DNA of 64,000 nucleotides. Source: Mustelus asterias. Taxonomy: Eukaryota. Made by a program: the position numbers and the translations under genes. The stretch lies in NCBI RefSeq assembly GCF_964213995.1, contig NC_135830.1, forward strand, positions 7,068,001-7,132,000, written 5' to 3'. Positions 5,405 through 62,650 of the stretch are shown here, piece by piece. Within the stretch, counting starts at the first letter, position 1. Each line of letters opens with the position of its first letter. The notes under the pieces are model-generated. The model did not search any database. It worked only from the letters and a program-made list of their open reading frames with translations, and was not told where the DNA came from.

Positions 5405-5704
5405 CGACACCGTCTCCGCCCACTCTCTACAGCCTGATCTCCTCCTGTCAGCAACACAACACCGGCGGCTCCGTCACCTATGGCTGTCTGGCGATGGACT
5501 ACTCCCCAGAAATCACCAGTCTCACCTGGAAGAAAAATGGACAGCTGATCACCACTGGATTTAAGACTTACCCATCAGTGAGAAACACGAAGGGAACCTA
5601 TACCCTGAGCAGCCAGTTAACCATCACCCAGTCAAAGGGAAAGTGCAGCAAAATCGACTGTGAGGTTCGACACAGCGGCTCAGTCAAGAGCATTGGAATG
5701 CAAT
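5405..5704 (+). CDS. IGHM: IgM heavy chain Cmu1 exon
   Basis: ttcccag acceptor, gtaagt donor, phase 1; [17 protein letters not shown]...[18 protein letters not shown]...CEVRHSGS, C1-set domain typical of shark Cmu1. Confidence 0.95.
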
Positions 5705-6663
5705 GTAAGTGTTGTGGAACTTGGGCAAGACAGGAACGCACCGATTGAACTGTATAAGGCCTTAGTTATAACTGATCTGTAGCATTCTGAAAAATTGAAT
5801 TATGCAAAATCCAGGTAAGTGCCTCCTGACTGAAAAGTTGCTCAGAATCAAAGAACAACAGAAATGATACTGTGCAGAATGAGGTCATTTAGCCCATCAT
5901 GTCTGTGCTGGCCAAAGGGGAGAACAAATAAACTAGCCAGACAAGTTAAGTCTATTTTCCAGCCCTTGCTCCGTAGCATTGCAGGTTAAAGCACTTGAGA
6001 TGCAGACCCAGATACCTTTTAAATGACCATGCTCCCTGGTAATTGAGCCCTCCACTTGGGGAATGAATTATTTTTGCCTACGTCCCTTATTTTTTTGTGA
6101 ACCACAATTATGTCACGCCTCAGCCTCCTCTTTTCCTAAAGAGAACAAACCCTGCCTATCCAATCTCGCCTCATGGCGGGAATTTTCAGTCCCTGGCAAC
6201 ATTCTTGTAAACCTCATCTCTCGCCAGAGTCATTACGTTATTCCTGCAACGTGGTGACCAGAACTGTACAGCAAACTCCAAACGTGGCCTAACTAGGTTT
6301 TATACAGCTCCATCATTGCATCACTGTTTTTGCATTCAATATCTCACATAATAGAGAAACTAATCTGATATGCTTTCTTGATCAACTTTTCCAGCTGCCC
6401 TACCATCTACAAGGACCTGTGGACGTGCACTCTAAGGTCTTGCATTTCCTCAATCCCTCTTAACATTCCAGTTTATTTCCTTGCTTTGTTTTCCCTTCCC
6501 AAATGCATTGTGTGGCACTTTTGACGGTTGAATTTCTCTGCCAATTCAACCAAACCATGGATATAATTCTCAAATCGGCAGCTATCGTGCTAAAATAAAA
6601 GAACTAATTTTAATTGATGTCAATTGAATCTTCAAGTAACATCTGAACATTTGTTTGTTGAAG

Positions 6664-6975
6664 GCCCAATCGTTATCACCCCAACCGTTATCCTCACCGT
6701 GAGTTCCAGTGAAGAAATCACCAGCAGAAAATTTGCAACCATCGTCTGTTCAATCATTGATTTCCAGCCAAAGTCAATGACGGTGGAGTGGCTGAAGAAT
6801 GGACAACCCATGAATTCAGGAATTGTCACCTCTCCCGCCTGTGAAGTGAATGGGAACTTCTCGGCCAGCAGTCGGTTGACAGTCTCCGCTCAGGAATGGT
6901 TCAGCAAAGCGGTCTACACCTGCCAGGTCACTCATCAAGGATTCACTCAGAGTCAGAACATCAGCGGATCTCTGG
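6664..6975 (+). CDS. IGHM: IgM heavy chain Cmu2 exon
   Basis: gaag acceptor, gtaag donor, phase 1; [41 protein letters not shown]...YTCQVTH. Confidence 0.95.
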
Positions 6976-7888
6976 GTAAGAGACTCAAACCGAGAAAAAA
7001 ATTATTCCGCTGTTAATCGAAATTAGGGATCTATTAAAGTTAATACAAAGCATAGAACAACTTCTAAGTTATTGTCATGTAGTTTGCTGCATTGGGACAG
7101 TGCCCCATTCAGAACTTCATCACAACATCAATTTTTGTTATTCCTTCATGAGATGTGCATTTGTGGCCCATCCCGGAGGCCACTTAAGTGTCAACCACGT
7201 TACTGTGGATCTGGAGTCACATGCATGCCAGGCCAGATAAAGACAACAGATTTACTTTTCTAAACGGCATTCGTGAACCAGGTGGGTTTTTACAACAACG
7301 GCTTCATGATGATCATTTGACTTTTAATCATAGATTTTTACTAAATTCAAATTTCACCATCTGCAGTGGTGAGATTCGAATCTGTGTCCCCAGAGTCGTG
7401 CCCTGGGTTACAAGACCATTGGCAACACCACCATGCCACTGCCTCCCCTTGAAATAGTGTTCCCTTCCATTTTGAAGTAACACAGTAAGCGAGGTGGTCT
7501 TGATGTCAGCTTTTTCCTGAGATAGCTGGAAAGATTTGGAGAGACAGTCGGTGTCGGACTGTTTCACAGGTCACAGCATAGGGGTAAAATATTGGGAAGT
7601 GCATCCACCCTACTTATAAACTAACTGCCAGTACTTGGTTCCTGAGTTCAGGAATGGTATATTTGTTGGGGAATACTGCAATGTTGATTCATGAGAATGA
7701 TACCGCTGCTAAAATACTTGAACAAAAAGAGAATAATTTCACAGAGCAGGCTGGTTTTCCATCCTCCATAGAGGTTGAAAGGTGATAGAGGTTGATATAT
7801 CGAAGGCAACTTCGTCTCCTTCAGGCTGAAGACTGCTGTCCTGCTTCTGAAGAGGGAACTAGGGTTGATTTTCATTTTTCATTCACAG

Positions 7889-8197
7889 ATCCTCCCCAGT
7901 GCCCTGATACCACAGTGACGATACAGCCACCACCAATAGAACAGGTCTTACTGGAGGCGACCGTGACCTTAACCTGCATCATTTCTCATGCTCCTTATGG
8001 AGTCAATGTGTCCTGGATCCGAGACAGGAAGTATTTGAAATCAGAGATTGCCGAAAAGCCAGGAGCGAATCCTGACAGCGTGGTCAGCAACTTAAACATC
8101 TCGACACAAGCCTGGCTGAGTGCGGCTGTGTTTGACTGCGTGGTGAGCCATCAGGATCTGCCGACTCCTTTAAGAAAATCCATCCACAAGGAAACAG
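7889..8197 (+). CDS. IGHM: IgM heavy chain Cmu3 exon
   Basis: ttcacag acceptor, gtgag donor; [17 protein letters not shown]...VSW...[22 protein letters not shown]. Confidence 0.95.
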
Positions 8198-8698
8198 GTG
8201 AGCTGAGAGATTGAAGCAATAAATGTGTCACTGTGTCTATTTCCAGTGTCAGTGTACTGGTCAATATTCAGTATTCAGTGCATTAATGGTGTCCCCTGAG
8301 TGGAAACTCTACTAACTAAAAACTGGGGGTTGTAGATATTTTTACGGGGAAATTTGATGTGTTGATGAATGAAAAGTGAACTGAAGGCGATGTTATTGGG
8401 TTGAGATCGAATAACGAGGGAGGAGCCTGATGTGGAGCATAAAAACCAGAAAACCAAAAATAAAGCCGATCAGTTGGGCCGAATAGCCTGATTCTGTGCT
8501 GTAAAATTTCTGAAACTTCCCAGTCCAGCCCCCTGAGTTATTTGAGAAAATAATTGTGTTCACCTCTGCTCCAAACTGGAAGTCAAAAATGGAAACATTT
8601 AAAATCGAAATGAAGCACATTTTTCTTATATCTAGCCAGCAGTTTCATTGTCTCCAGAATTCTCCAGTTTATTGACATTTATTGTACATTTTCTGCAG

Positions 8699-9090
8699 AT
8701 CCAAATCCGCGGGAACCGTTCGTCTCTGTCCTCTTGCCCTCGGCAGAAGAAGTCTCCGCTCAGAGATTCGTCTCCCTCAGCTGCTTAGTGAGACGTTTCT
8801 CCCCTCGAGAGATCTTCGTCAAGTGGACCGTCAACGACAAGCCGGTGAATCCTGGGAACTATAAGAACACCGAGGTGGTCGCGGAGAGCGGGAATAGCTC
8901 CTTCTTCATGTACAGCCTGTTATCCATTGCAGCAGAGGAATGGTCCAGCGGCGCTTCTTACTCCTGTGTGGTGGGACATGAAGCCATCCCCTTGAAGATC
9001 ATCAACAGAACAGTTGACAAATCCAGCGGTAAACCCAGTTTTGTGAACATTTCCCTTGCACTGATGGACACCGTTAATTCATGTCAATGA
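8699..9090 (+). CDS. IGHM: IgM heavy chain Cmu4 exon plus secretory tailpiece (internal donor after 9028 for membrane form)
   Basis: ctgcag acceptor; [18 protein letters not shown]...[11 protein letters not shown]; tail [20 protein letters not shown] with N-glycan sequon and penultimate Cys; G|GTAAA internal donor. Confidence 0.97.
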
Positions 9091-9117
9091 GAATCACTCG
9101 GTTACATTAAAAACTTC

Positions 9118-9132
9118 AATAAAAAGAATAAA
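9118..9132 (+). terminator. Secretory-form polyadenylation signals (two AATAAA)
   Basis: AATAAA at 9118-9123 and 9127-9132, ~30-40 nt after the secretory stop. Confidence 0.85.
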
Positions 9133-10189
9133 ATCTTTTTCCTCCAACGATAAATGAAATACCCAATTGCTTAATTGATTGGTTTTCAATTTTACTTCCA
9201 CTATGTATCTTTGGTTTGAGTCAGGTATTTTCACGTCTCGGGCCCAAGCCTTGTTGAACCAGTGCACCCAGCTCAGATACACCCTGGGTTAGAGACAGAG
9301 TAGAGCACATTCATTACAGGATTCTGCAAAATATCTTCACCGACTTTCCTCCCACTGAGGAGAAATCTGACAATTTCAACATTTCTGACAAACAAACACA
9401 ATTTAGATCTCGGTGTTCCTGCTTCTCTCATTGTCCATGCCTTTACCATTGATGTCAGCTTTAAGCTGCTGCACCACACCCACTGGGAACTGAAGTGAGG
9501 GTCACACACAAACATGGAGCAACAATCCCCCCCATCAGAGAGAGGGGAGAGTGAAATTGTGAACATACCGGATTCCTACTCACCCAACAAAGAGAGGGGA
9601 GGAGCAGTAGCTAACCCATGTACCACCACTTCCTCAATGAAAAGAGGAGGAATGTCATTATTTAATCCACTCACCTCCACCTCGTCAGTGGTTAGAACCA
9701 TCAGGCACATTGCTTCACCGGGTAGAGAGAGGGAAATTATGAGCTCACTCTCCTCCCTCTTCGCAAGTAACGTGTTTGGAAGGGACCAGCTCTCTACTAG
9801 AAGAACCCAGTTGCCAACAGTACAAATTAGCTTCTGGCTTATTTGCTGCAGAGTTTGAAGTATCATTATCCTAATCAATGTGATGCATATATACTTATGC
9901 AACATAATTTTAAAATGTTTCTGCACTCTTGTTCCTGTTAATCATGTCCTGGCATTGATTTCCCATAATGCAAATTGAAACAAATGGTTGAATCCTCCCC
10001 GGTTTTTACTGTTCTGTCCCTGATGTTTCTGAGATGCATCAATGAATGATTTCATTCGTTCTCCTGATATCCCCGTGCCACTCACATAAACTACATTCAT
10101 ACAGCAAAACATTGAAAATATGCTCCATTATTCGTATTGTTTGGATCATTTTCAGTTAATGATTGCGGTGAAACTTGGAGCAACAGCTA

Positions 10190-12160: not shown

Positions 12161-12729
12161 TCAATACAAACGGTAGGCAAATGATGAAAGTACAATTTAA
12201 ACGTGACTTTTTAATGGAGATATCCACAGATTTATTATCCCAATGTACAATGAACATATAAACACGCTGAGAAACTGAATTAAGCTCACGGTCTACTAAA
12301 TATTTCCACCATAAAGAAGCACAGATCGGAAATTACATCCCAACTCTTAAACAACAACATTCACAGTTTACAGATCAGTAACCATCTGTGAAAACAATCA
12401 TTGATCAGTGAACGTTCCTCGATATCAGTGATAATACTCTTCAATAAGGGATAGTTCCGAATTGTTAAAAAATCAACTGATTTTCAAGAAAACACCTTCA
12501 GTGCTTTCTGACATGGACTGTCCAAGGAATGTCAATAAAGATCAGGTGTGAAAATAGTTACGGAGGTCGGTTACTGACTGTCCTGAGCTTAAGAGTAGAT
12601 ATACATTGAAAATTAAGTTCAAGAATAAATGAACAGTTTAAAAAGGAGAACGGGGAGAAGAAAAATAACAATAAGATTACCTGGATAAATAAAGTAATCT
12701 AATTTCATATCCTGGTCTCCGTCCCCTAG

Positions 12730-12857
12730 ACTCCACCGACCGCATCTGGATTGAAGACAATGAGGATGATAACAGTAACATCTGGACAACGGCTTCCACA
12801 TTCATTGTCCTGTTCTTCCTGAGCATTTTCTACAGCACTGCGGTCACTCTGGTGAAG
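12730..12857 (+). CDS. IGHM: IgM TM1 exon
   Basis: cccctag acceptor, gtgag donor; (D)STDRIWIEDNEDDNSNIWTTASTFIVLFFLSIFYSTAVTLVK with conserved IgM transmembrane (CART) motif; in frame with Cmu4 internal donor. Confidence 0.95.
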
Positions 12858-12993
12858 GTGAGATGATTGAATGCACTCACATATCAAACTGACAGAATGG
12901 ACTTGAAAAATCTCTCAATGTTCCATTAAAAACTCTAACTTTAATATCCCGCATCATAAACAACTGCTTCATTATTGTATCTTTCTTTTACAG

Positions 12994-13002
12994 ATCAAGT
13001 GA
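12994..13002 (+). CDS. IGHM: IgM TM2 exon (IK*)
   Basis: tttacag acceptor then ATC AAG TGA, giving the K-I-K cytoplasmic tail. Confidence 0.9.
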   Translation: MK

Positions 13003-13454
13003 TGGCTTGAATTTTGGATGCTGCAGATTTCCCTCAGCTGATTATTATGATCTCCGTATGACACAAATACAATATCTGCTCTTGGTGACTCTATCAGTCA
13101 AATTCTCTCCGTTTATCATTCTGAATCTGTAACTGAGACAATCGTAGACGGTATTTCCGTTTTCAGAGTGAAAAGTACGAGGCATTTTTTGTTATAATGT
13201 AATTGTGGTTAACAGTTTCCCCATAGTTTAAATATCATGTATAAATAAGAAACTTTTCTCATTCCTTATCCATATTTGTTAATTCCTCTTTCTATTAAGG
13301 TCCTGTTTTCTCTTTCTGGTGTATGTAACAGATGTACAAATATTGACGGATTCCCTGTGCATGTGTTGTGTTCTCAATGTGAAGCTCGATCGTTAAATTC
13401 ACTTTTCTAACTTTAAAAAATAATGTCGCTGTAAAATATTCTCTGAATTTTTAA

Positions 13455-13460
13455 AATAAA
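13455..13460 (+). terminator. Probable membrane-form polyadenylation signal
   Basis: AATAAA ~450 nt after TM2 stop. Confidence 0.6.
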
Positions 13461-13629
13461 TATTGAATGAAAATTTAACCATCTCTGGCTTGGCTTAATT
13501 CCGTTTTCCAAAGCGCATCAACTCCGCCTCATATTCCATATTATACGGTTTCCCCTCTTTCCCAGACATAGGTTCCCCCAGTCCTGTGCGGGATGTGTTT
13601 GAACTCAAGGCCGTTCAGTGAAAGAGTCA

Positions 13630-13648
13630 CTGCGCCACCAAGTGGCCA
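13630..13648 (-). promoter_or_regulatory. CTCF-like motif
   Basis: Minus strand TGGCCACTTGGTGGCGCAG closely resembles the CTCF core TGGCCACCAGGGGGCGCTA. Confidence 0.55.
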
Positions 13649-14029
13649 ATCCGTATAAAGACACCTTCATCTCTGCCTTTTTATGATAAAATCCAGAGAC
13701 AGAGCGAGTGAAGAATGAGAAGAACCTCGGTGATTTCACTCATAAACTGGTCTGCCACTGACCGAGTTTCAGGTAATTCTAAAAAGCAAAGGCCGATGCA
13801 GGACAGTGTGTGGCAGAAGATAGTTTCCTTTACACTGCCCCTTAAAAAAGCTATCAGTGTCGCTGCAGCGTGGGTTAACAGTGTGAATCTCTCTATATTT
13901 CGTCCGATGAAATACTTACAAGGCAGACATGCCACAAGCTAGATAGAGAACACATACAGAGCAGAGGTGCAAACCATGAGGTGAAACCAAGAGACTGAGG
14001 TGCATTTCACATAAGCACATAATAGATTA

Positions 14030-14845
14030 CAAATTTCGGAAAGCGGAAATGCCCTCCGTGCCTTTTTCTACCGCGCGGAGGCGTTTCCTGTGCGGGCTGC
14101 TGCTGCACACCTTCCACGACCGCATCCTCGCCTGTCGCCCGGATACACCTTGGCGGGCCTTGTTGCCGCCGGGGGGCCGAGGTCCCCGCTGGAGGTCCCT
14201 CTATGGAGGGATCTCCCCCAATTACGTCGGGGACCTGGGGTGGAGGGTGATGCATGCAGCAGTGCCGCACAACCGTAGGAATCACTGGTTCACGGGCTCC
14301 AAAGCATGCCCTTTCTGTGGCCTGGTGGAGTCCGTGGACCATGTCTATGTTTTGTGTCTTAAGCTGCAACGCCCTTTTTGTTTTGCTAAAGAACCTTTTA
14401 TTGATGTTTTGTTTGCACTTCAGTCCCACGCTCCTGATCTATGGACACCCGCTGCGGAGAGGGGAGGGTCGGGATGGCGACCTCGTCTTGAACGTGCTCC
14501 TCGGCCTGGCGAAACACGCCATTTACCGGTCCAGGCAGCGGGCGATCAAGGGGGCCATCCATCCTGACTGTCTTGCCCTCTACCGCGGCTACGTTCGCGG
14601 CCAGGTGTCCCTGGAGAGGGAGCATGCGGTGTCCACGGGCGTGGTTGACGCCTTCCGCGCCCGTTGGGCATCGCAGGGGTTGGGGTGCGTTATTGACCCT
14701 GACAATCACATTTTAATTTGATGTTTTTAAGTTTCCTTTGTACTTTGATTTCTGTTCGGGCTGTTCCCCCTCCTTTTGGGGAGCTCCCCTTTTACTTTGT
14801 CCTGATTTAATCTGAGTTTGTTTATTTGGTTTGACCTAAAAAGAG
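14030..14845 (+). mobile_element. Tx1/L1-clade LINE 3' fragment (zinc-binding domain), frameshifted
   Basis: GC-rich; WRSLYGG...DLGWRVMH...CPFCGLVESVDHVY zf-RVT-like motif; T-rich 3' UTR. Confidence 0.75.
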
Positions 14846-15239
14846 GGCAACATCTGGGAGGAAATCAATGTTTCCCCCTTTCCATTTCTTTTCTCATTCT
14901 GGGGGAAATTGGGGACTTGCAGCAAGTGAAGGGAATGAAGTGAATTCGGTCTGTATATTTCACACATTTTTACTCCAGTAATGTAGACATTTATCTGTCT
15001 GGCAGCCTGCATGGAGATTTCCAGGTCCTCTGTATCCAGGACAGGAAGCAGTGAGCATGGATCTGTCAATCAGCCTCAATCAGCACCTTCAGGAGAATTG
15101 GGAGGGTGAATATTAGATACAGCAGAGTGAGAATGGAGGGAGAGTGTGTGGGATGGAGATTTACAGCTTTGGGGAATGACAGAGGAAAGAATGTTCCATA
15201 GAAATTAGAATGATAATATGGCGGCCGGTCCCGCCTCCG

Positions 15240-16965
15240 ACTTCGATTTAGCTCGAACTTGCTCTACAGCAGAACCAGTCGTGGTGCCACAGGCCTGGTT
15301 GCTGCTGGTATTTTCCCCTGAGTGGCTATTTCAACACCCCCTCCCCACCACTCCCCGCAACAGTATCCAAAACGGTATACCTCTTTGAGAGGGGAATCGC
15401 CACAGGAGACTCCTGCATTACATGCCTGCCTGACCTGGCAGTCACCCATCTATCTGTCAGGACTTGTTGTTTGACACCTTCTTGAAGCTAGTGTCTGTAG
15501 AGTCATATAGTCATAAAGGTTTACAGCATGGAAACAGGCCCTTCGGCCCAAATTGGCATGCCATCCCTTTTTTTTGAAGCCCTTAAACTAATCCCAATTG
15601 CCCGCATTTGGCCCATATCCATCGTACCCATGTAACTATCTAAATGTTTTTAAAAAGATAACTATCACACCATCCATCGCACTTACTTCCCCCTGTATAC
15701 TCCACCGTCATAGAGTCATAGAGGTTACAGCATGGAAACAGACCCTTTGACCCAACTTGTCCATGTCGCCCTTTTATTAACCACTAAGCTGTTCCCAAAT
15801 GCCCATGTTTGGCCCATATCCCTCCATACTCATTTTATACATGTAGCTGTCCAAAATCTTTTTAGAAGACAAAATTGTATCCGCCTCTCCAACTACCTCT
15901 GGCAGCTTGTCCCATGCATTCACCATCCTCTGTGTGAAAGAATTGCCCTTCTGTACCCTCTTGTAGCTCTCCTCTGTCACCTTAAACTTACCCACTCTCG
16001 TTGTAGACTCCCCGACCTTCTGGAAAAGATGTTGACCATCAAACTGACTATGCCCCTCATTATTTTATAGATCTCCATAAGTTCACCCCTAAGTCTGATA
16101 CCATCCAGGGAAAAATGTCCCTGCATATCCAGTCTCTACTTATAACTCAAACCATCAAGTCCTAGTAGCATCCTAGTAAATATTTTCTGCACTCTTTCTC
16201 GTTTAATAATATCCTTTCTATAATAAGTTGACAAGAACAGTACACAGTCTTCCAACTGTGGCCTTACCAATGTCTTGTGCAACTTGAACAAGACGTCCCA
16301 ACTCCTGTATTCAATGTTCTGAACAATGAAACCAAGCATGCTGAATGCCTTCTTCACCACTCTGTCCACCTGTGACTCCACTTTCAATTAGCTATGATCT
16401 CTTTGTTCTGTAACTCTCCGCAACATCCTCCCATTAAATGATTAAGCCCTGTCCTGGTTCGATCGACCAAAATGGATCACCTTGCATTCATCTGAATAAA
16501 ACTCCATCTTCCATTCATCAGTCCACTGGCCCAATTGACTATGATCCTGTTGCAATCCTTGATAACCATCTTCACTGTCCACTATGCCTCCAATCTTGGT
16601 GTCATCTGCAAACTTATCAACCATGCCACCTAAATTCTCATCCAAATCATTAATATACGTGACAAATAACAGTGGACCCAGCCCTGAGGCACACCGCTGG
16701 TCACAGGCCTCTAGTTTGAAAAACAACCCTCTACAACCACCCTCTGTCTTCTGTCAACAAGCCAATTTTGTATCCATTTAGCGACCTCACCCTGGATCCC
16801 GTGGGAGTGTTTCCAGCTGCTGCTCCAACCGAACCATGCGGTCTGTGAGGAGCTGCAGCTGGTCACACTTCCAGCAGACATAGACGCAGGGACACGAGAA
16901 ATTTCCCTAATCTCCCACATCTGGCAGGAGGAGCATATCATTGTCGTTACTGCCACCTCTGCACT
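15240..16965 (-). mobile_element. Nested, decayed CR1/HER1-like LINE fragments
   Basis: Minus-strand peptides LGPLLFVTYINDLD...KFADDTKIGG, LVRPQLEDCV, FTQRMVNAWDKLP; tagagtca tails. Confidence 0.85.
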
Positions 16966-17303: not shown

Positions 17304-17346
17304 ATGGCAATCCTTCTTGTTTTCACCCTGTGTGTCTGTTTACCCC
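17304..17346 (+). CDS. Leader exon of NAR-TCR V
   Basis: ATG...MAILLVFTLCVCLP + C, gtgagt donor (phase 1), ~150 nt upstream of V exon. Confidence 0.85.
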
Positions 17347-17494
17347 GTGAGTACCGATCAAACTAAAACACATTCTGTTGGATTGAATATAAAGCTGTCC
17401 CAGCCCATCCCAATTACAGACACTTCTGGGGTTTTAGCTCCGTTGTCTGCTTCGGCTCTGCTGGTCCATTAAACCCTTTCTCTTTAATTTCCTG

Positions 17495-17782
17495 GGTCTT
17501 TCAGTCAGTCAGTGACACAGAGCCCGGCAGCGGTGACCAGGAAGGAGTGTCAGTCTCTCACCATCAATTGTGTTTATTACGGTCATAACTGGGGCTACCG
17601 TTTCCAAAATGGATATTTCTTCAGACAAACCCAGACCGGGACAGAGCGGGAGCGGATCTCCAGCGGAGGGAGATTTGTTGTGTCTGTGAATAAAGCAGAA
17701 AAGACATTTTCGCTGGAAATTCGGGATGTGAGAGTTGAAGACACCGCCATCTATTACTGTAAAGCTGATTACTGGTACTACA
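17495..17782 (+). CDS. NAR-TCR variable segment (VNAR-type V)
   Basis: QSVTQSPAAVTRKECQSLTINCVYY...RQTQTGTERERISSGGRFVVSVNKAEKTFSLEIRDVRVEDTAIYYCKADYWYY: VNAR-like CDR2 deletion, extra FR1 Cys; start position inferred, acceptor non-canonical. Confidence 0.9.
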
Positions 17783-17820
17783 CACCGTGATGGGCCTCGG
17801 CTTCCAGCGATACAAAAACT
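17783..17820 (+). other. RSS (22-nt spacer) of NAR-TCR V
   Basis: CACCGTG-22 nt-ACAAAAACT. Confidence 0.9.
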
Positions 17821-18180: not shown

Positions 18181-18251
18181 TGTTTTGATGCTGAATTATA
18201 ACACTGTGTAACTTTGGGAGAGTCACAGTGGAAGGAAGCTGAGCAAATACC
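18181..18251 (+). other. NAR-TCR D segment (18209-18223, TAACTTTGGGAGAGT) flanked by 12/12 RSS
   Basis: TGTTTTGAT-12-CACTGTG [D] CACAGTG-12-GCAAATACC. Confidence 0.9.
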
Positions 18252-18601
18252 TGTGCACAATTACAGTACAAATTCTCAGGGCCCAGACAGTGAATCATTG
18301 GTTTGACGATATTATCGCTGTAATCTGGATTACTTCTACTGTAATCTCCACCACTTACATCTTTCTTTGATTTTTTTTGCTATATATGAAGTTAATATTT
18401 CCTCCCTGCGGCCATTTACTGAGAGCTTGGGCCTCACAAAGTACAATTTGAACCGACAGAGACGTTGAAACGTTGAATCTTGTTTATTAATTTTAAATCC
18501 CCCGAATAATTGGACACTTCCGAATGACTGCTGATGGTTTCCCGGCAGATTGAGATGTCGATGGTTCTTGTACCGGGGAGACTGAGAGAGGTGCCACTGT
18601 G

Positions 18602-18654
18602 TACTAAACGGAAATATGTGGATGGATCCGGGACGTTGGTGACTGTCACAGCCG
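18602..18654 (+). CDS. NAR-TCR J segment
   Basis: GGTTCTTGT-23-CACTGTG (18563-18601); TKRKYVDGSGTLVTVTA (NAR-type DGxG); gtaagt donor phase 1. Confidence 0.92.
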
Positions 18655-22932: not shown

Positions 22933-23238
22933 ATTCCTCTTCCCTGGTATCCAAGAATCCGCCTCTACAAATCTCTGCTGTCGATGACACGGTTGCTTTA
23001 AGCTGTGAATATTCAGGGTTCTGTCAGTACACAGTACACTGGTACAGCCAGCCCCCAGGGCAGGCTCTGAAATACTTGCTGCAGAAACACACTTCAGGAG
23101 GGGGCAATAAAGAAAACGCTGCCGGGGAGAGAATTTCTGCTTCTATCGATTCTGTCCAGAAAATCAGCCGGTTAAAGATCTCCAAACTGCAACTCAGCGA
23201 CTCGGCTGTCTATTACTGTGGACTGAGTCGGCACATAG
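22933..23238 (+). CDS. TRDV: Leaderless NAR-TCR-supporting TCR delta V segment
   Basis: cctgcag acceptor in phase with NAR J donor; DSSSLVSKNPP...LSCEYSGFCQYTVHWYSQPPGQALKYLL...SDSAVYYCGLSRHI; extra CDR1 Cys; no leader seen upstream. Confidence 0.92.
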
Positions 23239-23399
23239 CACAGTGATGCAGAACACGGAGAGAGCTGTACAAAAACCTAAACATGGTGAGGATTACAGAC
23301 ACAGTGATACAGAACACGGAGAGAGCTGCACAAAAACCTGAACATGGTGAGGATTACAGACGCAGTGATACAGAACACGGAGAGAGATGTGCTGAAAAC
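23239..23399 (+). repeat. Three tandem 23-RSS copies (61-bp period)
   Basis: CACAGTG-23-ACAAAAACC at 23239 and 23300; degenerate CGCAGTG-23-GCTGAAAAC at 23361. Confidence 0.95.
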
Positions 23400-28903: not shown

Positions 28904-28955
28904 ATGGATCACCCACGAGCGTTAAAAGCTTTCATTCTAGCAGCAATCATATCAG
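28904..28955 (+). CDS. Leader exon of divergent V segment
   Basis: MDHPRALKAFILAAIIS + G, gtgagt donor; TATAAA at 28844-28849; in phase with V exon at 29659. Confidence 0.7.
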
Positions 28956-29080
28956 GTGAGTTACACTTCACATTCTCATTGATTACCTCTCAAGAAAGCC
29001 TTTTATTCTTCCACATTTAATGTTGCTTTTAGAGAAAAAGTAGAGCAATATTCGCAGTGGTTGGATTTAATTAATTATTA

Positions 29081-29360
29081 GGGGCGGCATTTTGGCACAA
29101 TGTTTAGCACTGCTGCCTCACAGCGCCAGGGACCCGGATTCGATTACCGGCTTGGGTCACTGTGCAGAGTCTGCACGTTCCCCCCATGTCTGCGTGAGTT
29201 TCCTCGGGGTGCTATGTTTTCCTCCTGCAGTCCGAAACATGTGCTGATTAGGTGCATTGGCCGTGCTATTCTCTCCCTCAGTGTAATAGAACAGGCGCTG
29301 GAGCGTGGCGACAGTAACTTCATTGCAGTGTTAATGTAAGCCCACTTGTGACACTGATAA
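29081..29360 (+). mobile_element. tRNA-derived SINE in leader intron
   Basis: GGGCGGCA...TTAGCACTGCTGCCTCACAGCGCCAGGGACCCGGATTCGATT head shared with the other SINEs. Confidence 0.8.
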
Positions 29361-29658
29361 ATCAACTTAATTTAGTTATTCTCATTGATTTCCTTTCAAT
29401 AAATTATTTTATATTCTTATATTTAATGTTGATCTTTCGAGATAAGTACACAGCAATATTACTGGTGACTGAGTTTATTTAATGATTGGAATTTTACAAA
29501 TAGTTATTTAAAAGCTTCAGTAGTGAGAAAAGGCAGTGGGAACTGGGGCCAACCTCCATTGGGCACACCCCATCCTCCCCCTCCCCCGCAGCTCCCCAGT
29601 TTCAAATCGATAGAGTGCCTGGAACCTCCACTTAATTCTAATTTTCTCTGTCCTTCAG

Positions 29659-29978
29659 GTAGCCTGGCTGCATCCGCAGTCATCCACCAGCCGGAGGCAG
29701 AGGTGAGGGTCCAACAGGGAGCCACCACGACAATCACCTGCTCCTACACAGAGGTGGAGAGAGCTTGCTTGGTCTGGTACCGGGAACCTCTCCACCCAGC
29801 CATGGGGGGAAGTCCCGAGTATATTGTCGTCCGCTGCACCGATGGTTTCAGTGACAGCGCCACATTTTCCAGGCGTCGCTTTTCCTCCTCCCTGAGCAAA
29901 ACTTACAGAATCATCAGTCTGACAGTTGCACCGGTGACAGCTGAGGACTCCAGGAAATACTTCTGCATCTTAAACACA
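29659..29978 (+). CDS. Divergent V segment (TCR alpha/delta-like) with two extra cysteines and a weak 23-RSS
   Basis: ttcag acceptor; VIHQPEAEVRVQQGATTTITCSYTEVERACLVWYRE...PEYIVVRCTDG...AEDSRKYFCILN; CACACTC-23-ACGTAAACT at 29979-30017. Confidence 0.8.
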
Positions 29979-31702: not shown

Positions 31703-32497
31703 ATGAGGTTAACAATGTTACTCGGACTATTGGAGGGTTCCTTCTGCAGTGAGCTGCTTGACATTTCCCCAAATTCCTGCTGTGTGTGTTTGCAGAACCT
31801 CACCTTTCAATGGTGTGTTACAGGGGAAGGAATCATCATAGAATCCCTACAGTGAGAAGGAGGCTATTTCACCATTGAGTTTGCACCCAGGCCCACTCTG
31901 CCATGTCCCCGTAACCCCTGCTAATCACCTAATCGAGACATCTACCGATATTTAGGAACACGTTAGCATGATAAATCCACCTAGCGTGCATATCTTTGGA
32001 CTGTGGAAGGAAATTGGAGCATTCAAAGGAAACCCACGCAGGCACGGGGAGAACGTCTAAACTCCACACAGATAGTACTCAGGCCTGGAATAAAAACCAC
32101 TGTGCCACCGATCCGCCCATCACAATCATGGATGTCTCTTTGACTTTAACAGGTGTCCAGTCGGAAGTAGTTCTGACGCAGCCAGAGGCAGAGAAGTGGT
32201 TCCCAGTGTAGTCCCTGTCCCTGACCTGCAATACCAGCGGCTTCGACTTCAGTGGCTATTGGCTGTACTGGTACTGTCATGGTCCCTGAAAGAGGCCAGA
32301 CTGGCTAGTTTCCTACTATGATGAAGACTTCCATTGATACTGTGGGGAGACTCGAGGACGATTCACTGTTTCCAAAGAGCTTGCACACAATATATTTGCT
32401 TTGGATGTCAGGTTTCTGACGATGGAGGAAACAGCTGCTTATTAGAGTACACAGTTAACACAGTGAGGCGGGTCAGCCCCAGATTTGTAAAAAAAAC
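31703..32497 (+). pseudogene. VH-like pseudogene (leader 31703-31748, V 32153-32458, 23-RSS 32459-32497)
   Basis: VQSEVVLTQPEAEKWFPV*SLSLTCNTSGFDFSGYWLYWY...; four in-frame stops, second Cys lost; CACAGTG-23-AAAAAAAAC; SINE in leader intron. Confidence 0.88.
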
Positions 32498-34168: not shown

Positions 34169-34220
34169 ATGAGCATGGCGCTAGCAATATCTCTCGGTCT
34201 GTTTATTGGCTTCTTATCCT
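34169..34220 (+). CDS. Leader exon of VH-like segment
   Basis: MSMALAISLGLFIGFLS + T, gtgagt donor; completes to ...FLSCVQS, like shark IgM VH leaders. Confidence 0.85.
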
Positions 34221-34339
34221 GTGAGTAGTTGGATATTCTCAGAAAGCTCCCATAGTCTCTGTTTAACATTAATCATTCCCTGTGGCGTGACACAAACTGG
34301 ATTCACCTCACCATAATTATTGTTTCTTTCGGTTAGCAG

Positions 34340-34644
34340 GCGTCCAGTCGGATGTGGTGTTGATCCAGCCAGAGGCAGAGATAGGGATAGTCGGGCAAAC
34401 CCTGACCCTAACCTGTAAAACCAGTGGATTTGATCTTGGGAGATACACCATGCTTTGGTACCGACACAGTCTCGGGAAGGGACCGGGCTGGCTCCTTTGG
34501 TACTACAATGAAAATAGCAAGAATTACAATCCGGAGTTTGGTGAACGAATCACTGCAACCAAATACCTTTCCAACAGTGTATTCGTGCTCTCTATTAGGA
34601 CTTTAACAATGGGAGGCAGCTCTACGTATCACTGTGCACAACGG
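34340..34644 (+). CDS. Stand-alone IgH (IgM-like) V segment in the TCRdelta V region, open frame; 23-RSS at 34645-34683
   Basis: CVQSDVVLIQPEAEIGIVGQTLTLTCKTSGFDLGRYTMLWYRHSLGKGPGWLL...STYHCAQR; CACAGTG-23-ACAAAAATC; no own D/J/C seen downstream. Confidence 0.9.
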
Positions 34645-34919
34645 CACAGTGATATAGATCACACCCAGCCCTGTACAAAAATCCACAAGAGGAATTGCAG
34701 CCATTTCCCTGCTTTCATTTTCATTCTTTGGATGTCCACCCTTAATTTTCCTTGAATTAAATGGTTTGTTCGGCCATATCAAATGGTGTTTGAGAGTCAA
34801 TCGCATTGTTGTGTGGATATGCCGTCACAGGTAGGCCAGGTCATGTAAGGAAGGTAGATTTCTTTCCTTAAAGGGTATCCGTGAATCAGATCAGTCTTTA
34901 CAACAATCGACAATTGTTT

Positions 34920-49134: not shown

Positions 49135-49217
49135 AGTTTTTGTACTGGCATGTATCACTGTGGTGGGCTACGTGGGACCACAGTAGCTGAATCTCCCTCA
49201 ACGCCCGTACAATAACC
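49135..49217 (+). other. TRDD: TCR delta-type D segment (49163-49178, GTGGGCTACGTGGGAC) with 12/23 RSS
   Basis: AGTTTTTGT-12-CACTGTG [D] CACAGTA-23-ACAATAACC; G-rich, open in all three frames. Confidence 0.92.
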
Positions 49218-49427
49218 TCCCAGCCTCACAGGAGTTCACCAACCTCTCTCAATAGCACCCCTCTCAGCCCACTCCCCGCCGCTGACTCCCAACCCCACCG
49301 TGATGTTGACCGAGTTTATCCTATTACTGGTCTGACCCAGCCCTAATCAAATCAGTCAGACACAGGACAGAGAGAAAGAGTGGTGAACGGGACCCCAGTG
49401 GATCTTGTTCCGGGATCAAACTCTGTG

Positions 49428-49487
49428 CAACATATGAAAAGGCTAAGCTCATCTTTGGCAACGGGACCAGGCTGATTGTGGAACCCA
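49428..49487 (+). CDS. TRDJ: TCR J segment 1 (apparently functional)
   Basis: GGATCTTGT-12-CTCTGTG; TYEKAKLIFGNGTRLIVEP; gtaagt donor. Confidence 0.9.
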
Positions 49488-51255: not shown

Positions 51256-51761
51256 ATTTGAGAAGATTCATTTTGCACTCAGAAGTTTTTGGCCTCATTG
51301 CAAAAGTGGGGAAAAAATTTGCCATTGTGACAAACGAACCTGACGAATTATACAATGATGAAGGAATGTGTCCTTTTCCACTTGCACATAAAGACGTTCC
51401 TCACACAACTAAGTATCTCACACGTACCAAGGGTTACCAGTCAACTATTGATGCCACAATGCTTCAAAGAATAGTGATCCAACTTTTTTTTAAAAAAGAA
51501 AACAATATTTCCTAATGCCAGACTGATTCCGGGATAGCAGGATTATTAGCTTTGTTTCTCTCTCTACACGTGCTGCCAGACGTACACAGTTTATCCAGAA
51601 TTGTCTCTTTCTAATTTGCTATTTAATCGGTCGCACCTGTTTTGAGGGCAGATAGGTCATAAAATTATGCTAAGAGCATGTACTCCCCAGGGTTTTGAAA
51701 TAGCTGAAGTCTCTGTGGCCTGCCCCAGTGGAAGCTTTCTGCTTGGGCAATAGTCACTGTG

Positions 51762-51824
51762 TGTATAATGCTGATACTGAAAAACTGATATTCGGCAGCG
51801 GCACCCGACTGCAGGTTGTGCCAA
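51762..51824 (+). CDS. TRDJ: TCR J segment 3 (apparently functional)
   Basis: GCTTTCTGC-12-CACTGTG; YNADTEKLIFGSGTRLQVVP; gtaagt donor. Confidence 0.88.
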
Positions 51825-53394
51825 GTAAGTGCGAGTCCACCTTCATTTCCTCCCATTAGATACAGATTTCTGCTGAATGGTGTCGGGTGAAAGGCCGGTA
51901 AAGAGCCAAGGCAGTGCTTGGAATGAAGGAGAAGCCATTGCACCAATCAATTAAGCTATTAGGCACCGAGTATCGAGTTCAGCTCACTGTTTATTAAGCC
52001 GTGTCATCAACACCAGTTGAAACATTAGGCATCAGTGATGTGACATCAAACTGAAATTGGGTTACTAATAGGATAGAAAATGCCAATTTAGCAGGTTGAG
52101 TCAAATGCCCACTGATTTGAGTAATTACCTACATATATTTCATTTTCAAGTTTGTCTTTGTTAAAACTAATAATCTTGCTAAAACTATACAAGGTACGAT
52201 TTAGACCACATCTGGAACACTGTCCCCTTACATTAGGAAACCTATACTGGCATTGGAGGCAGTTCAGGGAAGGCCACTACTTTGATCCCAGGTATGGATA
52301 TGTTTTTTCGGAGAGTTTGAGTATGTTGGGCCTGTACTTAGTGGAGTTTAGAAGCATGAGATGTGACCTTATTGAGACTTATTGGATTCTCAGGGGACAT
52401 GACAAGGTTAGATGCTGAGACGTTATTACCTCTTGTAGGACCAGAGGTCATAATCCCAAAGTATGGGGTTGCCCATTTATATAATGAAGATTTTCTTCTT
52501 TCAAGCCAGCAGTGAATCTGTGGAATCATTTACCGCAGAGCGCTGTACAGGTTGAATGTTCAGATTTTTAACCCACAGGGCAATCGAGGGTTACGAGGAT
52601 ACAACGGGAAAGAGGTATTCAGAATTATCACATCAGCTAATTCATGATCTCATTGAATGACCGATGGGCCAAATGGCATCCTTCTGCCCCGTCGTCCTAT
52701 GGTCTCCGGTCTTTGTTAAACTGCTGACACGAATGCATGCTTGAAATAAGGCTTCAAAGTGAAGTGTTGGTCAACGATTATCAACAACAGGTTGATGTTT
52801 TGAACCAGGTGTTAGAGTTCAAATTAAAGGGTCACTCCTTTAAAGACAGATATGAGGAGACTTTTTTCTCTCTTCAAGAGTAGTGAGTCTCGTCATCTCT
52901 CTTCTTCAAACATCAAGGGGAACAGGGCCTTTGATTATTTTAAACACAGCTAGATAGATTCTTGATTAACAAGGGATAAACGGTGATCGGGAGTAGGCAG
53001 GAATGTGGGGGTGAGGTTACAATCAGATCAGTCATGATCTTACTGAATAGCGGTTAGGCTGGAGTGGCCCAGTGCCTTACTCCGACTCCCACTTTGCATG
53101 TTCGTATGTGTTGATGTCAAACTATTTTCCCAGGATTTGTGTCTCCTGGGTGTTCAGGGAGAAGTATCGGTGAAGATGGAAATTGTGAAACACAGTCAAT
53201 TCATTATCCAAATATTGTTCCCTGATATAGTCAAAAAAACAGTGGGAGCTAAGTGTGAGGGAGAGGGAGGGAACGGTTATATTTGGTTGAGGAGAGAAGC
53301 TAATTAAAAGAAGTGACATGATACAAACTGAATGTGAGCTAGCCCTGTGTTCATATGGCTGGGTCCATATTTTGTAGTAGCTGTTACTACTGAA

Positions 53395-53442
53395 CTGAGA
53401 AGCTTGCCTTTGGCAAAGGGACCAAACTCACTGTGGAGCCCA
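53395..53442 (+). pseudogene. TCR J segment 4 with damaged heptamer
   Basis: ATATTTTGT-12-TACTGAA (lacks GTG); EKLAFGKGTKLTVEP; gtaagt donor intact. Confidence 0.75.
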
Positions 53443-54513: not shown

Positions 54514-54606
54514 CATCAGTGATTATGCCAGTGTTGCTGTGTATACTGGATGGAATCTGAATGAGCTGATGCACTGGTAGGTTTCTGATGGCCACTATTC
54601 ACGGTG

Positions 54607-54672
54607 CTCATTACTATGACGGTACTTATAAACTCATCTTTGGCTACGGGAAACAACTGAATGTTGTGCCAA
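54607..54672 (+). pseudogene. TCR J segment 5, splice donor mutated (ATAAGT)
   Basis: GGTTTCTGA-11-CACGGTG; HYYDGTYKLIFGYGKQLNVVP; donor AT instead of GT. Confidence 0.8.
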
Positions 54673-55904: not shown

Positions 55905-55913
55905 ATGATTGTG

Positions 55914-60790: not shown

Positions 60791-61753
60791 AGTATTGTGA
60801 GGTGGTGAAACTGGGGGGAGGCGATGGCCTAGTGGCGTTATCGCTAGATTATTAATCCAGGAAATCAACTAGTGTTCTGGGGACCCTGCATTCAAATCCC
60901 TCCACGACAGATGGTGGAATTTGAATTCAATAATCTGGAATTAAGAATCTACTGTTGACGATGCAAACCACTGTTGGAAAAACCCATCTCGTTGAGTAAT
61001 GTCCTTTAGAGAAAGAAATCTGCCATTCTTATTAGATCTGGCCAACATGTGCAATTTGATTGACACTCAAGGGCAATATTGGGAATGGATAATAAACTCT
61101 GGCCAGCCAACGGTGCCCATGTCCCACGAATGGACAAAAAATATCTCTCTTTTGGAAAATGAGCTCGAGTAACTGTTGATTCAAGTAAACATAAACGCAT
61201 CTTTCAGACTCAACATGTCTGTTTACCTCTTCGAAATATAACAGGATTATGACAATAAGAACAGATAATGCTGGGAAAAACCACAGCAGATCAGGCAGCA
61301 TCTGTAAGGAGAGAAAGCTTAGCTAACAAATTAAAGACTATCCGTTGAATTGTATTTCTTTTCTGCCAGGTTTTGAGGCGTCACTGGCAAAGCCATGTTG
61401 CAAATTTATGTTAAGCCATTTCAGAGATTGGCAGTGCAGGCAGAACCTTGTTCCTATGTTACCTAACAAAGTTTCAGAGGCAAAATATACTTCTTGCAGG
61501 GGGAGGACGTGGGTGGCTATATTTGACCAGTGGCTGCCTTGGCTCAGAAATTCTTCACGTTGATAGAATCTTAGAGAATCCAAGGAGGCTATTCGGCCCA
61601 TTTAGCCTGTGATGGTGGGGAGGGGGAAGATATGCAATATCTGTTTCCTGCAGTGAATCAGTGACTGTTCCAGCTTTGTCTTTGCCGTGAATTGTCTGAA
61701 ATCTGAAACAGCTATCTCAATAGAAGGTTTCTGTCTGAGAAATTGTTACTGTG

Positions 61754-61803
61754 CTAAGTTAAGCTAACGTTCGGCAGCGGCACCCAGGTGACAGTTGTAC
61801 CAA
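61754..61803 (+). CDS. TRDJ: TCR J segment 10 (good RSS; in-frame TAA at 5' end)
   Basis: GGTTTCTGT-12-TACTGTG; *VKLTFGSGTQVTVVP; gtgagt donor. Confidence 0.82.
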
Positions 61804-62590
61804 GTGAGTGTGAAGTCAGTGTGTTTCTATTCTTTCACTCCACATCTCCTCTGTGATCTAGTTTTCTGTTGTAAGTAGTCTAGTCAAGTTGGGCAGAGTG
61901 CCAATATAATATGTGGCATGCAGGCGAAGAGATTGCACAGTTTTGAGTCAGTTTTGATCTAGCTCAGCCTACCCAGTCATTGAGGTACATGGGACAGGAG
62001 TTGGGACTGCACGCCTCAGTAATATGGTATTGAACTGAGAAGCAGATTTGTGTACTGTGAACGGGATAGGAAGATTCCACCCAGAGTGTTGATCAAAAAG
62101 AAAGAGGGGAGACGAATAAGCACCATTGTTCTGTTTAAACCTTTGTAATTGTGAATTACACAGGCTTTTCATTTTGTTGTTGAAAAATAAATTCTCCTCA
62201 TATCAGTCCCATATTCTTTGACTATGAACGCCGGTTCTGGACCCTGCTGCCATCCTGCATTTCTCGTGTCGAATCCTGCATTATGGGTTTTAATGAGATC
62301 TTCTGCTCCTGCCTCCCTTCTTCTGAACCACAGACAATAAAATCCTAACCAACTCAATCTCTCCTCATATGTCAGTCCTGCCACTCCAGAATCTGTCCGG
62401 TGAACCTTCGGTGCACTCCCTCTTTAGCCAGAACATCTTTTCTTGGATATTGTTTTGCATTTTTTTCTGGATGAAATAATGAACCAGCTGTGGAAGCAAA
62501 TCGAATCTCAAAAACCTTAGCATGAAAAGCAATCCTTACATTGCTATTCATGTGGGTTATGTCGATTTTGTACCATCTGGAATCACTGTG

Positions 62591-62650
62591 CAAACTATGC
62601 AACCAGAAAGCTTACCTTTGGCAGTGGAACCAAACTCACTGTAGAACCCA
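62591..62650 (+). CDS. TRDJ: TCR J segment 11 (apparently functional)
   Basis: CGATTTTGT-12-CACTGTG; NYATRKLTFGSGTKLTVEP; gtaagt donor. Confidence 0.9.

What the first reader, a model, noticed from the sequence alone, without database searches (positions are those of the whole stretch)
5405..62650. Intact IgM constant region physically embedded upstream of a NAR-TCR / TCRdelta V-D-J region: a hybrid B/T receptor locus
Seen: all six IgM C exons are open, with canonical splice sites and both polyA signals, and end only ~4.3 kb before the NAR-TCR leader and ~36 kb before a 12/23 D and J array, all in the same orientation. Known: shark IgH genes are V-D-D-J-C clusters, and shark TCRdelta transcripts using IgM/IgW V segments were first described as trans-rearrangements, with IgH remnants later reported in the TCRalpha/delta locus. 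Inference: an apparently functional IgM cluster here could serve B cells while its VH (upstream, outside the window) could join Ddelta in cis by simple deletion in T cells, so one V gene would feed both an antibody and a TCR.
Basis: partly seen in the sequence, partly recalled or inferred. Interest (0 to 1): 0.85.

Follow-up and report, generated by a model that had tools for sequence, protein, structure and literature searches.

The report
Shark IgM gene beside TCR-delta segments
An intact-looking shark antibody (IgM) constant gene really does sit a few kilobases upstream of T-cell-receptor delta gene segments, but this kind of mixed antibody/T-cell-receptor neighbourhood was already described for sharks and rays in 2025.

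Summary
Six IgM constant exons (Cmu1-4, TM1, TM2; 5405-13002) are open, share one splice phase, have AG/GT sites and AATAAA signals after both ends. TM2's stop lies 4.3 kb before a complete germline NAR-TCR cassette (V, D, J, leaderless supporting Vdelta). A TCR-type V, a broken and an intact VH-like V follow, then one 12/23 D 36 kb downstream and six J segments, all on the + strand.

Orientation and RSS spacers would allow an upstream VH to join Ddelta by deletion. The VH-D-D-JH lies outside the window, no RNA run was available, and short contigs could not bridge the repeat block at 13976-16930.

The kind is known. Flajnik et al. 2025 (PMC12227049, sections read) report IgM, IgW and IgNAR clusters linked near TCRalpha/delta in four elasmobranchs, with TCR-type Vs between IgH clusters. 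They already use that proximity to explain "trans-rearrangements". The scan's unchecked notes list similar IgM/TCR-V neighbours elsewhere in this genome.

Verdict: a real, well-preserved instance of a published architecture. Low to moderate interest.

The parts
2202..4426 (+). Tandem repeats in the intron upstream of Cmu1: a C-rich 14-mer array at 2202-3688 and a G-rich 20-mer array at 3861-4426
   Evidence: Tandem Repeats Finder; strong GC skew. No JH motif was found in 1-5400.
5405..5704 (+). Cmu1 exon
   Evidence: Open frame, AG acceptor, GTAAGT donor; Pfam C1-set E 3.6e-15
6664..6975 (+). Cmu2 exon
   Evidence: C1-set E 5.9e-21
7889..8197 (+). Cmu3 exon
   Evidence: C1-set E 5.3e-09
8699..9090 (+). 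Cmu4 exon with secretory tailpiece (ends ...DTVNSCQ, stop). The internal donor for the membrane form is GT at 9029-9030.
   Evidence: C1-set E 1.7e-21; aligns to solved IgM Cmu4 + tailpiece; tailpiece conserved in 4 relatives
9118..9132 (+). Two AATAAA signals after the secretory stop
12730..12857 (+). TM1 exon (acidic stretch plus hydrophobic span ...NIWTTASTFIVLFFLSIFYSTAVTLVK)
12994..13002 (+). TM2 exon (IK, stop)
13455..13460 (+). AATAAA after TM2
13976..16930 (.). Block of high-copy transposon fragments between the IgM gene and NAR-TCR. This is the only stretch where a misjoin could hide.
   Evidence: k-mer depth 4e3-3e5 against 20-650 in the flanks; reverse-transcriptase-like ORFs
17304..17820 (+). 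NAR-TCR leader (17304-17346), V exon (about 17505/17513-17782) and 23-RSS (17783-17820)
   Evidence: best PDB hits are shark VNAR domains
18181..18251 (+). NAR-TCR D (18209-18223) with a 12-RSS on each side
18563..18654 (+). NAR-TCR J (18602-18654) with 23-RSS and a GTAAGT donor in phase 1
22933..23399 (+). Supporting Vdelta exon without a leader (22933-23238; AG acceptor in phase with the NAR J donor). It is followed by a 23-RSS at 23239-23277, a second copy at 23300-23338 and a degenerate third copy.
   Evidence: V-set E 1.2e-13
28904..29976 (+). TCR alpha/delta- or light-chain-like V: candidate leader 28904-28955, V exon 29659 to about 29976, poor RSS (CACACAC, weak nonamer)
31703..32497 (+). 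VH-like pseudogene (leader 31703-31748, V exon about 32154-32458 with stop codons) that keeps a 23-RSS at 32459-32497
34175..34683 (+). Intact VH-like V (leader 34175-34220, V exon 34340-34644, 23-RSS 34645-34683) with no D, J or C of its own
   Evidence: best PDB hits are antibody VH domains
49135..49217 (+). Ddelta (49163-49178) with a 5' 12-RSS and a 3' 23-RSS
49400..49487 (+). J segment 1 (49428-49487) with 12-RSS, FGNG and a GT donor
51734..51824 (+). J segment 2 (51762-51824) with 12-RSS, FGSG and a GT donor
53392..53442 (+). J-like segment 3 with FGKG and a GT donor, but no recognisable heptamer and an in-frame stop at its 5' end
54580..54672 (+). J-like segment 4 with FGYG, an 11-spacer RSS and no GT donor (likely pseudogene)
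61726..61803 (+). J segment 5 (61754-61803) with 12-RSS, FGSG and a GT donor
62563..62650 (+). J segment 6 (62591-62650) with 12-RSS, FGSG and a GT donor

Best explanation
This is a genuine stretch of an elasmobranch antigen-receptor complex. The constant gene of an IgM minicluster (four C exons, secretory tail, two membrane exons, all intact) lies inside the D-proximal end of the TCR delta V region. It is 4.3 kb upstream of a complete germline NAR-TCR cassette and 36 kb upstream of Ddelta and the J segments, in the same orientation.

Shown here: the exon structure, the splice phases, the RSS spacers and the order of the parts.

Inferred: in B cells the minicluster rearranges its own V-D-D-J, which lies upstream of the window, and splices to Cmu. 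In T cells, V segments with a 23-RSS join the 12-RSS of Ddelta by deletion. Those V segments include the NAR-TCR supporting Vdelta, the TCR-type V and the VH-like V at 34 kb. Any V lying further upstream, the IgM cluster's VH included, could do the same and would excise the Cmu gene with the intervening DNA.

Ig-like V domains on TCR delta chains are most simply supplied by the dedicated VH-like V at 34 kb. Use of the cluster's own VH is allowed but not demonstrated.
For: - Exons, splice sites and polyA signals.
- C1-set in 4 of 4 C exons.
- IgM Cmu4-tailpiece match.
- VNAR-like V with its own 12/12 D and 23-RSS J, whose donor is in phase with a leaderless V exon.
- VH-like V with leader and 23-RSS.
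- Only one other D-like element, a 12/23 D, and 12-RSS J segments with FGxG and alpha/delta-type ends.
- No other C exon in the window.
- Independent runs of the same organism code hold the unique flanks at 99-100% identity (16997-17165 and 17337-17523 with 0 differences; 13852-14037 with 0 differences).
- Published precedent: PMC12227049, sections 6 and 15.
- Unchecked scan notes place a J-C intron 3.2-5 kb before the window, an inverted V 36.8 kb beyond it, and other IgM C genes next to TCR V arrays in this genome.
Against: - No read or contig bridges 13976-16930, so contiguity rests on the assembly alone.
- At five intron positions (12437-12657) every laid contig carries a different letter from the window. 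This exact IgM copy was therefore not re-found in those runs. That may be because depth about ten times higher than at NAR-TCR shows many near-identical paralogues and contigs drop rare variants.
- A contig identical over 13852-14037 then runs on unlike the window, and its continuation is not in the window.
- The VH-D-D-JH and Cdelta are outside the window.
- No RNA evidence for this Cmu copy.
- The window's Cmu4 has R where 3 of 4 relatives have G (LVRRFSP against VRGFSP), of unknown effect.
Confidence: 0.8

Rival explanations
1. Dual-use VH. The VH of this IgM cluster is rearranged within the cluster in B cells. In T cells it joins Ddelta in cis by a deletion of some tens of kilobases, so that one germline V feeds both an antibody and a TCR delta chain.
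For: Every mapped part is in the same orientation. V-type 23-RSS and the Ddelta 5' 12-RSS are compatible. Chimeric IgM/IgW V - TCR delta transcripts are reported for nurse shark, and proximity is offered in print as their explanation (PMC12227049 sections 4, 6 and 15; PMC5931798 discussion passage).
Against: The VH and its RSS were not seen because they are outside the window. No transcript data were available. Two VH-like Vs without Ig D/J/C lie closer to Ddelta, and that published class of dedicated segments could account for Ig-like V use without the cluster's VH. The 23-RSS for shark VH is recalled from the literature and was not tested here.
Confidence: 0.25
2. Silent or orphan C gene. 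The IgM constant gene is a non-expressed copy, for example V-less or lacking control elements, kept open by recent duplication or by gene conversion with the many other IgM clusters. It plays no part in either lineage.
For: k-mer depth over the TM region is about ten times that of the NAR-TCR flank, so there are many near-identical paralogues that could homogenise it. Unchecked scan notes describe V-less and headless IgM clusters elsewhere in this genome.
Against: All six exons, all splice sites and both polyA signals are intact. The variable positions seen in the laid contigs fall in introns and the 3' flank (five at 12437-12657, then 13144, 13158, 13850), with none in TM1 or TM2. An unchecked scan note reads the DNA just before the window as a J-C intron.
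Confidence: 0.15
3. Assembly misjoin. An IgM cluster contig was joined to the TCR delta region through the shared transposon block at 14.0-16.9 kb.
For: No contig bridges 13976-16930. One contig identical up to 14037 continues differently, and its continuation is absent from the window.
Against: The diverging contig has multi-copy depth (about 320), so it most likely comes from paralogous IgM clusters. IgM C genes next to TCR alpha/delta Vs recur in this genome (unchecked notes) and in four published species. Ig-type V genes lie downstream in the same window regardless.
Confidence: 0.05

Closest known systems
Elasmobranch antigen-receptor complex (IgM/IgW/IgNAR miniclusters linked near TCR alpha/delta; Flajnik et al., Sci Adv 2025, PMC12227049; abstract and sections 6, 15, 18 read)
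   Same: IgH minicluster genes and TCR alpha/delta segments share one chromosome stretch, with TCR-type V exons next to IgH clusters and NAR-TCR V in the same region. Proximity is offered there as the basis of Ig V - TCR delta joining.
   Different: The text I read says 'linked near' and gives no distances. Here the last IgM exon is 4.3 kb from a NAR-TCR leader and 36 kb from Ddelta. Whether that fine-scale order is already shown in their Fig. 1 or table S1 I could not see, because figures are not held and supplements are closed. The species of the window is unknown to me.
[quoted passage not shown]
   Same: The V at 34175-34644 is VH-like by sequence. It has a leader and a 23-RSS, has no Ig D/J/C of its own, and is the nearest intact V to Ddelta in the window.
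   Different: It was not compared with nurse shark TAILV sequences, since none were available. Expression with Cdelta only was not tested.
NAR-TCR, the doubly rearranging TCR delta (Criscitiello et al., PNAS 2006; seen only as described in PMC12227049 and PMC5931798)
   Same: A VNAR-like V with its own D and J lies upstream of a leaderless supporting Vdelta that carries its own RSS.
   Different: Nothing different was found in the cassette itself. The RSS behind the supporting V is present in three tandem copies.
VH genes inside TCR delta loci of other vertebrates (frog, coelacanth, chicken, monotremes and marsupials), as listed in PMC12227049 section 15
   Same: Ig-type V genes are used by, or placed for use by, TCR delta.
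   Different: In those cases only V segments are reported in the TCR locus. Here a whole, apparently intact Ig constant gene is present as well.

Membership tests
IgM heavy-chain constant gene (shark minicluster type) | Four C1-set constant domains with canonical Cys/Trp/Cys | tested here: met
   4 of 4 exons pass Pfam C1-set. The Cys-Trp-Cys pattern is visible in each translation.
IgM heavy-chain constant gene (shark minicluster type) | Secretory tailpiece with an N-glycosylation site and a penultimate Cys, on the Cmu4 exon | tested here: met
   The exon aligns over residues 5-128 to solved IgM Cmu4 + tailpiece chains. The tail [23 protein letters not shown] is identical or nearly so in 4 relatives.
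IgM heavy-chain constant gene (shark minicluster type) | Alternative membrane form: internal donor in Cmu4, plus TM1 and TM2 exons | tested here: met
   Donor GT at 9029-9030, TM1 12730-12857, TM2 12994-13002, all in phase. That the TM sequence fits the conserved Ig membrane motif is recalled, not tested.
IgM heavy-chain constant gene (shark minicluster type) | Own VH-D-D-JH a few kb upstream | not testable with these tools
   This region is outside the window. No JH motif occurs in 1-5400. An unchecked scan note calls the DNA 3.2-5 kb before the window a J-C intron.
IgM heavy-chain constant gene (shark minicluster type) | Expressed in B cells | not testable with these tools
   No listed holder is on record as RNA. 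The four runs laid were contigs with DNA-like cover.
NAR-TCR cassette | VNAR-type V with leader | tested here: met
   Best PDB hits are shark VNAR domains, E 3e-18. Leader at 17304-17346.
NAR-TCR cassette | Own D and J with compatible RSSs | tested here: met
   V 23-RSS, D 12/12, J 23-RSS
NAR-TCR cassette | J donor splices in frame to a leaderless supporting Vdelta that has its own RSS | tested here: met
   Phase-1 donor at 18654|18655 and AG acceptor at 22932|22933. No leader was found in the 630 bases upstream of the V exon. 23-RSS at 23239.
TCR delta D-J region | D with 5' 12-RSS and 3' 23-RSS | tested here: met
   49135-49217
TCR delta D-J region | J segments with 12-RSS, FGxG and splice donor | tested here: met
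   4 of 6 J-like segments meet all three. The one at 53.4 kb lacks a heptamer and the one at 54.6 kb lacks a GT donor.
TCR delta D-J region | Cdelta downstream of the J segments | not testable with these tools
   There is no C exon in the window after the J array. An unchecked note places an inverted V 36.8 kb beyond the end.
TAILV | VH-like V within the TCR delta locus, without Ig D/J/C of its own | tested here: met
TAILV | Groups with nurse shark TAILV in a tree; expressed with Cdelta and not with Ig C | not tested
   No TAILV sequences or transcripts were available. The homologue search was blank.
Elasmobranch antigen-receptor complex | IgH minicluster genes physically linked to TCR alpha/delta segments | tested here: met
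   They share one 64-kb window, 4.3 kb and 36 kb apart. This rests on the assembly, because the read test of contiguity was inconclusive.

The most novel reading that the evidence does not exclude
A complete, functional IgM minicluster sits inside the D-proximal end of the TCR delta V array. Its single germline VH is then used both for IgM heavy chains in B cells and, by a cis deletion that excises its own D, J and Cmu as a circle, for TCR delta chains in T cells. The 'bona fide trans-rearranged' IgM V - TCR delta transcripts of sharks would then come from ordinary intralocus joining of this and similar clusters.
Probability: 0.25. Interest if true: 0.6.

Novelty: new member of a known kind. 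Interest (0 to 1): 0.3.

Why it matters
If the arrangement is as assembled, it gives a base-level view of where an antibody gene cluster ends and the TCR delta gene begins in a cartilaginous fish. That boundary bears on how IgH and TCR delta diverged from a common locus. It also bears on how Ig V domains come to be used on shark T-cell receptors.

It also makes one question directly testable. Are the chimeric IgM V - TCR delta transcripts made from the VH of a working IgM cluster in cis, from dedicated VH-like segments, or in trans? The general picture, though, is already published: IgH clusters linked to and mixed with TCR alpha/delta V genes, with proximity explaining the chimeras. The gain here is detail rather than a new principle.

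Tried and rejected
A JH just upstream of Cmu1: a 23-spacer RSS-like match at 5012-5050 is followed by no J-like coding sequence, and no [FW]GxG motif occurs in 1-5400. I took it as chance.

A second Ddelta at 48081: the 12-RSS at 48052-48080 has neither a 3' heptamer nor a J motif behind it. It remains a lone RSS.

TCR beta or alpha identity of the D-J array: the J ends (…VEP, …VVP) are of the alpha/delta type. A D with 12/23 RSSs sits 250 bp before the first J. NAR-TCR, a delta-only form by the papers read, lies upstream. I therefore read the array as delta. Cdelta itself was not seen.

Contiguity by reads: only Logan contigs of 100-280 letters were laid. The block 13976-16930 is high-copy repeat, so the test was inconclusive. 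I then searched the window for the continuation of a contig that leaves the window at 14037, to see whether the block is a simple insertion. It found 0 matches, which is also uninformative.

Expression: no listed run is on record as RNA, so this was not tested.

Species and relatives:
- The Cmu4 exon search gave 8 proteins among 18 candidates. The best named hit was a Chiloscyllium punctatum fragment at 82%, with an unnamed fragment at 95%.
- The VH-like V search found 2 candidates, none significant.
- The NAR V search gave 7 of 8 candidates significant, none with an informative name.
- The species remains unknown to me.

Ig octamer: ATGCAAAT has 5 matches in the window against 3.6 expected. 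One lies about 220 bp before the VH-like leader. This is not above chance.

Literature: five counted searches found one paper that covers IgH-TCR alpha/delta linkage in elasmobranchs (PMC12227049). I read its abstract, sections 6, 15 and 18, and found passages. From PMC5931798 and PMC6795676 I saw found passages only. Deiss 2019, Ott 2021, Criscitiello 2010, Criscitiello 2006 and a 2024 review are not held. What I say of them comes from citations in the papers read or from recall. They may already show this very order of genes.

Every exon was searched apart.

Full report
**What is in the window**

The window has no N. From 5405 to 13002 on the + strand lie six exons of an IgM heavy-chain constant gene:
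- Cmu1 5405-5704
- Cmu2 6664-6975
- Cmu3 7889-8197
- Cmu4 with the secretory tail 8699-9090
- TM1 12730-12857
- TM2 12994-13002

The C-domain and TM1 exons start with two bases that complete a codon (phase 1); TM1 ends on a whole codon and TM2 starts on one. Each acceptor is AG and each donor is GT. The donor for the membrane form lies inside Cmu4, with GT at 9029-9030. All four C exons pass Pfam's C1-set threshold. Cmu4 with its tail aligns over residues 5-128 to solved IgM Cmu4-tailpiece chains. The tail is identical or nearly so in four relatives, among them bamboo shark and elephant shark fragments. AATAAA stands at 9118 and 9127, and again at 13455.

Upstream of Cmu1 there is no J motif. 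There are two long tandem arrays instead: a C-rich 14-mer at 2202-3688 and a G-rich 20-mer at 3861-4426. The JH therefore lies more than 5.4 kb upstream, outside the window.

**Downstream of the IgM gene**

A block of high-copy transposon fragments runs from 13976 to 16930. A complete germline NAR-TCR cassette follows:
- Leader at 17304-17346.
- A V exon whose best solved relatives are shark VNAR domains, with a 23-RSS.
- A D at 18209-18223 flanked by 12-RSSs on both sides.
- A J at 18602-18654 with a 23-RSS and a phase-1 donor.
- A V exon at 22933-23238 that has an AG acceptor in phase with that donor and no leader. Behind it is a perfect 23-RSS, present in three tandem copies, the third degenerate.

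Further V genes follow:
- A V of TCR alpha/delta or light-chain type with a poor RSS, at 28904-29976.
- A VH-like pseudogene with stop codons but an intact 23-RSS, at 31703-32497.
- An intact VH-like V with leader and 23-RSS at 34175-34683. Its best solved relatives are antibody VH domains.

After LINE fragments (about 35-42 kb) comes the only other D-like element of the window, at 49163-49178, with a 5' 12-RSS and a 3' 23-RSS.

Six J-like segments lie between 49428 and 62650. Four of them have a 12-RSS, FGxG and a GT donor. The one at 53.4 kb lacks a heptamer and the one at 54.6 kb lacks a GT donor. A local tblastn of all these exons against the window found no further V or C copies and no TCR C exon. 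All the parts above are on the + strand.

**What could not be confirmed**

One search for sequencing runs listed 23 rows, none on record as RNA and none holding half of the sampled words. I laid the four best runs (one organism code, one study) on 12400-18300.
- They are short contigs of about 100-280 letters.
- The unique flanks are present at 99-100% identity: 13852-14037, 16997-17165 and 17337-17523 with no differences, and 17854-18065 with one.
- Nothing bridges 13976-16930, where k-mer depth rises to between 4e3 and 3e5.
- Depth over the TM region (about 180-650 in X1) is roughly ten times that of the NAR-TCR leader region (about 20-70). The IgM part therefore has many near-identical paralogues.
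- At five intron positions (12437-12657) all laid contigs differ from the window. No differences fall in TM1 or TM2.
- One contig identical up to 14037 then continues unlike the window, and its continuation is not elsewhere in the window.

I read this as the end of the unit shared among IgM clusters, but it does not exclude a misjoin. Contiguity therefore rests on the assembly.

**How it most likely works**

The IgM gene has everything a working constant gene needs. The NAR-TCR cassette, the VH-like V, the D and four J segments look functional.

The RSS grammar is the usual one. V segments carry 23-RSSs, and the D carries a 12-RSS on the V side and a 23-RSS on the J side. The J segments carry 12-RSSs. 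Since all the parts face the same way, any V upstream of the D joins by deletion. A VH of the IgM cluster would lie upstream in the same orientation. That it carries a 23-RSS is recalled for shark VH and not seen here. It could join the D in cis and would excise its own D, J and Cmu, the NAR-TCR cassette and the other Vs.

That step is inferred, not shown. A simpler source of Ig-like V domains for TCR delta is the dedicated VH-like V at 34 kb, the nearest intact V to the D in this window.

**Comparison with what is known**

Flajnik et al. [quoted passage not shown] They also report that TCR alpha/delta-type V exons lie between IgH clusters, and that NAR-TCR V genes lie in the same region. [quoted passage not shown] They cite earlier work for VH genes in the TCR alpha/delta locus of elephant shark and nurse shark, and for the TAILV class. 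I could not read those earlier papers.

Five literature searches found no other paper on this linkage. The text I read gives no distances and does not say that an intact IgM C gene lies within some 40 kb of Ddelta.

Unchecked notes of this scan list several other IgM C genes beside TCR alpha/delta V arrays in the same genome. One is another intact-looking IgM C gene upstream of TCR Vs 'in the same orientation as NAR-TCR and C-delta' on another piece. The scan has thus met this arrangement before on other DNA of this genome.

**Verdict**

The kind of locus is known, and this is at most a new, finely resolved instance of it. I cannot tell whether the species is one of the four published. By Cmu4 identity it is not a close relative of bamboo sharks, at 82%.

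I put the anatomical reading at 0.8, the dual-use reading at 0.25, a silent C gene at 0.15 and a misjoin at 0.05. Interest is 0.3.

Each exon was handled on its own.

Noticed in passing
window 2202-4426: Two long tandem arrays lie in the intron before Cmu1: a C-rich 14-mer (about 105 copies, 2202-3688) and a G-rich 20-mer (about 28 copies, 3861-4426). Their strand skews are opposite. The G-rich one recalls switch-region repeats.
   Followed up: partly
window 23239-23399: The 23-RSS behind the NAR-TCR supporting Vdelta is part of a 61-bp unit present three times. There are two perfect heptamer/nonamer pairs (23239, 23300) and a degenerate third (23361).
   Followed up: partly
window 48052-48080: A lone, well-formed 12-RSS (CACAGTG, 12-13 spacer, A-rich nonamer) about 1.1 kb upstream of Ddelta, with neither D-like nor J-like coding sequence behind it.
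   Followed up: partly
window 53392-53442 and 54580-54672: Two of the six J-like segments look defective. One has no heptamer and an in-frame stop. The other has FGYG, an 11-base spacer and ATAAGT in place of a GT donor.
   Followed up: yes
window 8701-9087: Cmu4 reads LVRRFSP where 3 of 4 relatives have VRGFSP. This letter, private to the copy, could serve as a marker for copy-specific expression.
   Followed up: no
window 13852-14037: In two of the four runs laid (X1 and X4), a contig identical to the window over this stretch (multi-copy depth about 320 for the X1 piece over this stretch) leaves it at 14037/14038, exactly where the high-copy repeat block starts. The continuation is not in the window.
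   Followed up: partly
window 33951-33958: An Ig octamer (ATGCAAAT) lies about 220 bp upstream of the ATG of the intact VH-like V. The motif has 5 matches in the window against 3.6 expected, so this is not above chance.
   Followed up: yes
window 10150-12300: The Cmu4-TM1 intron is filled with CA/TG-rich simple repeats, plus a reverse-transcriptase tail fragment on the minus strand (ORF 10831-11388).
   Followed up: no
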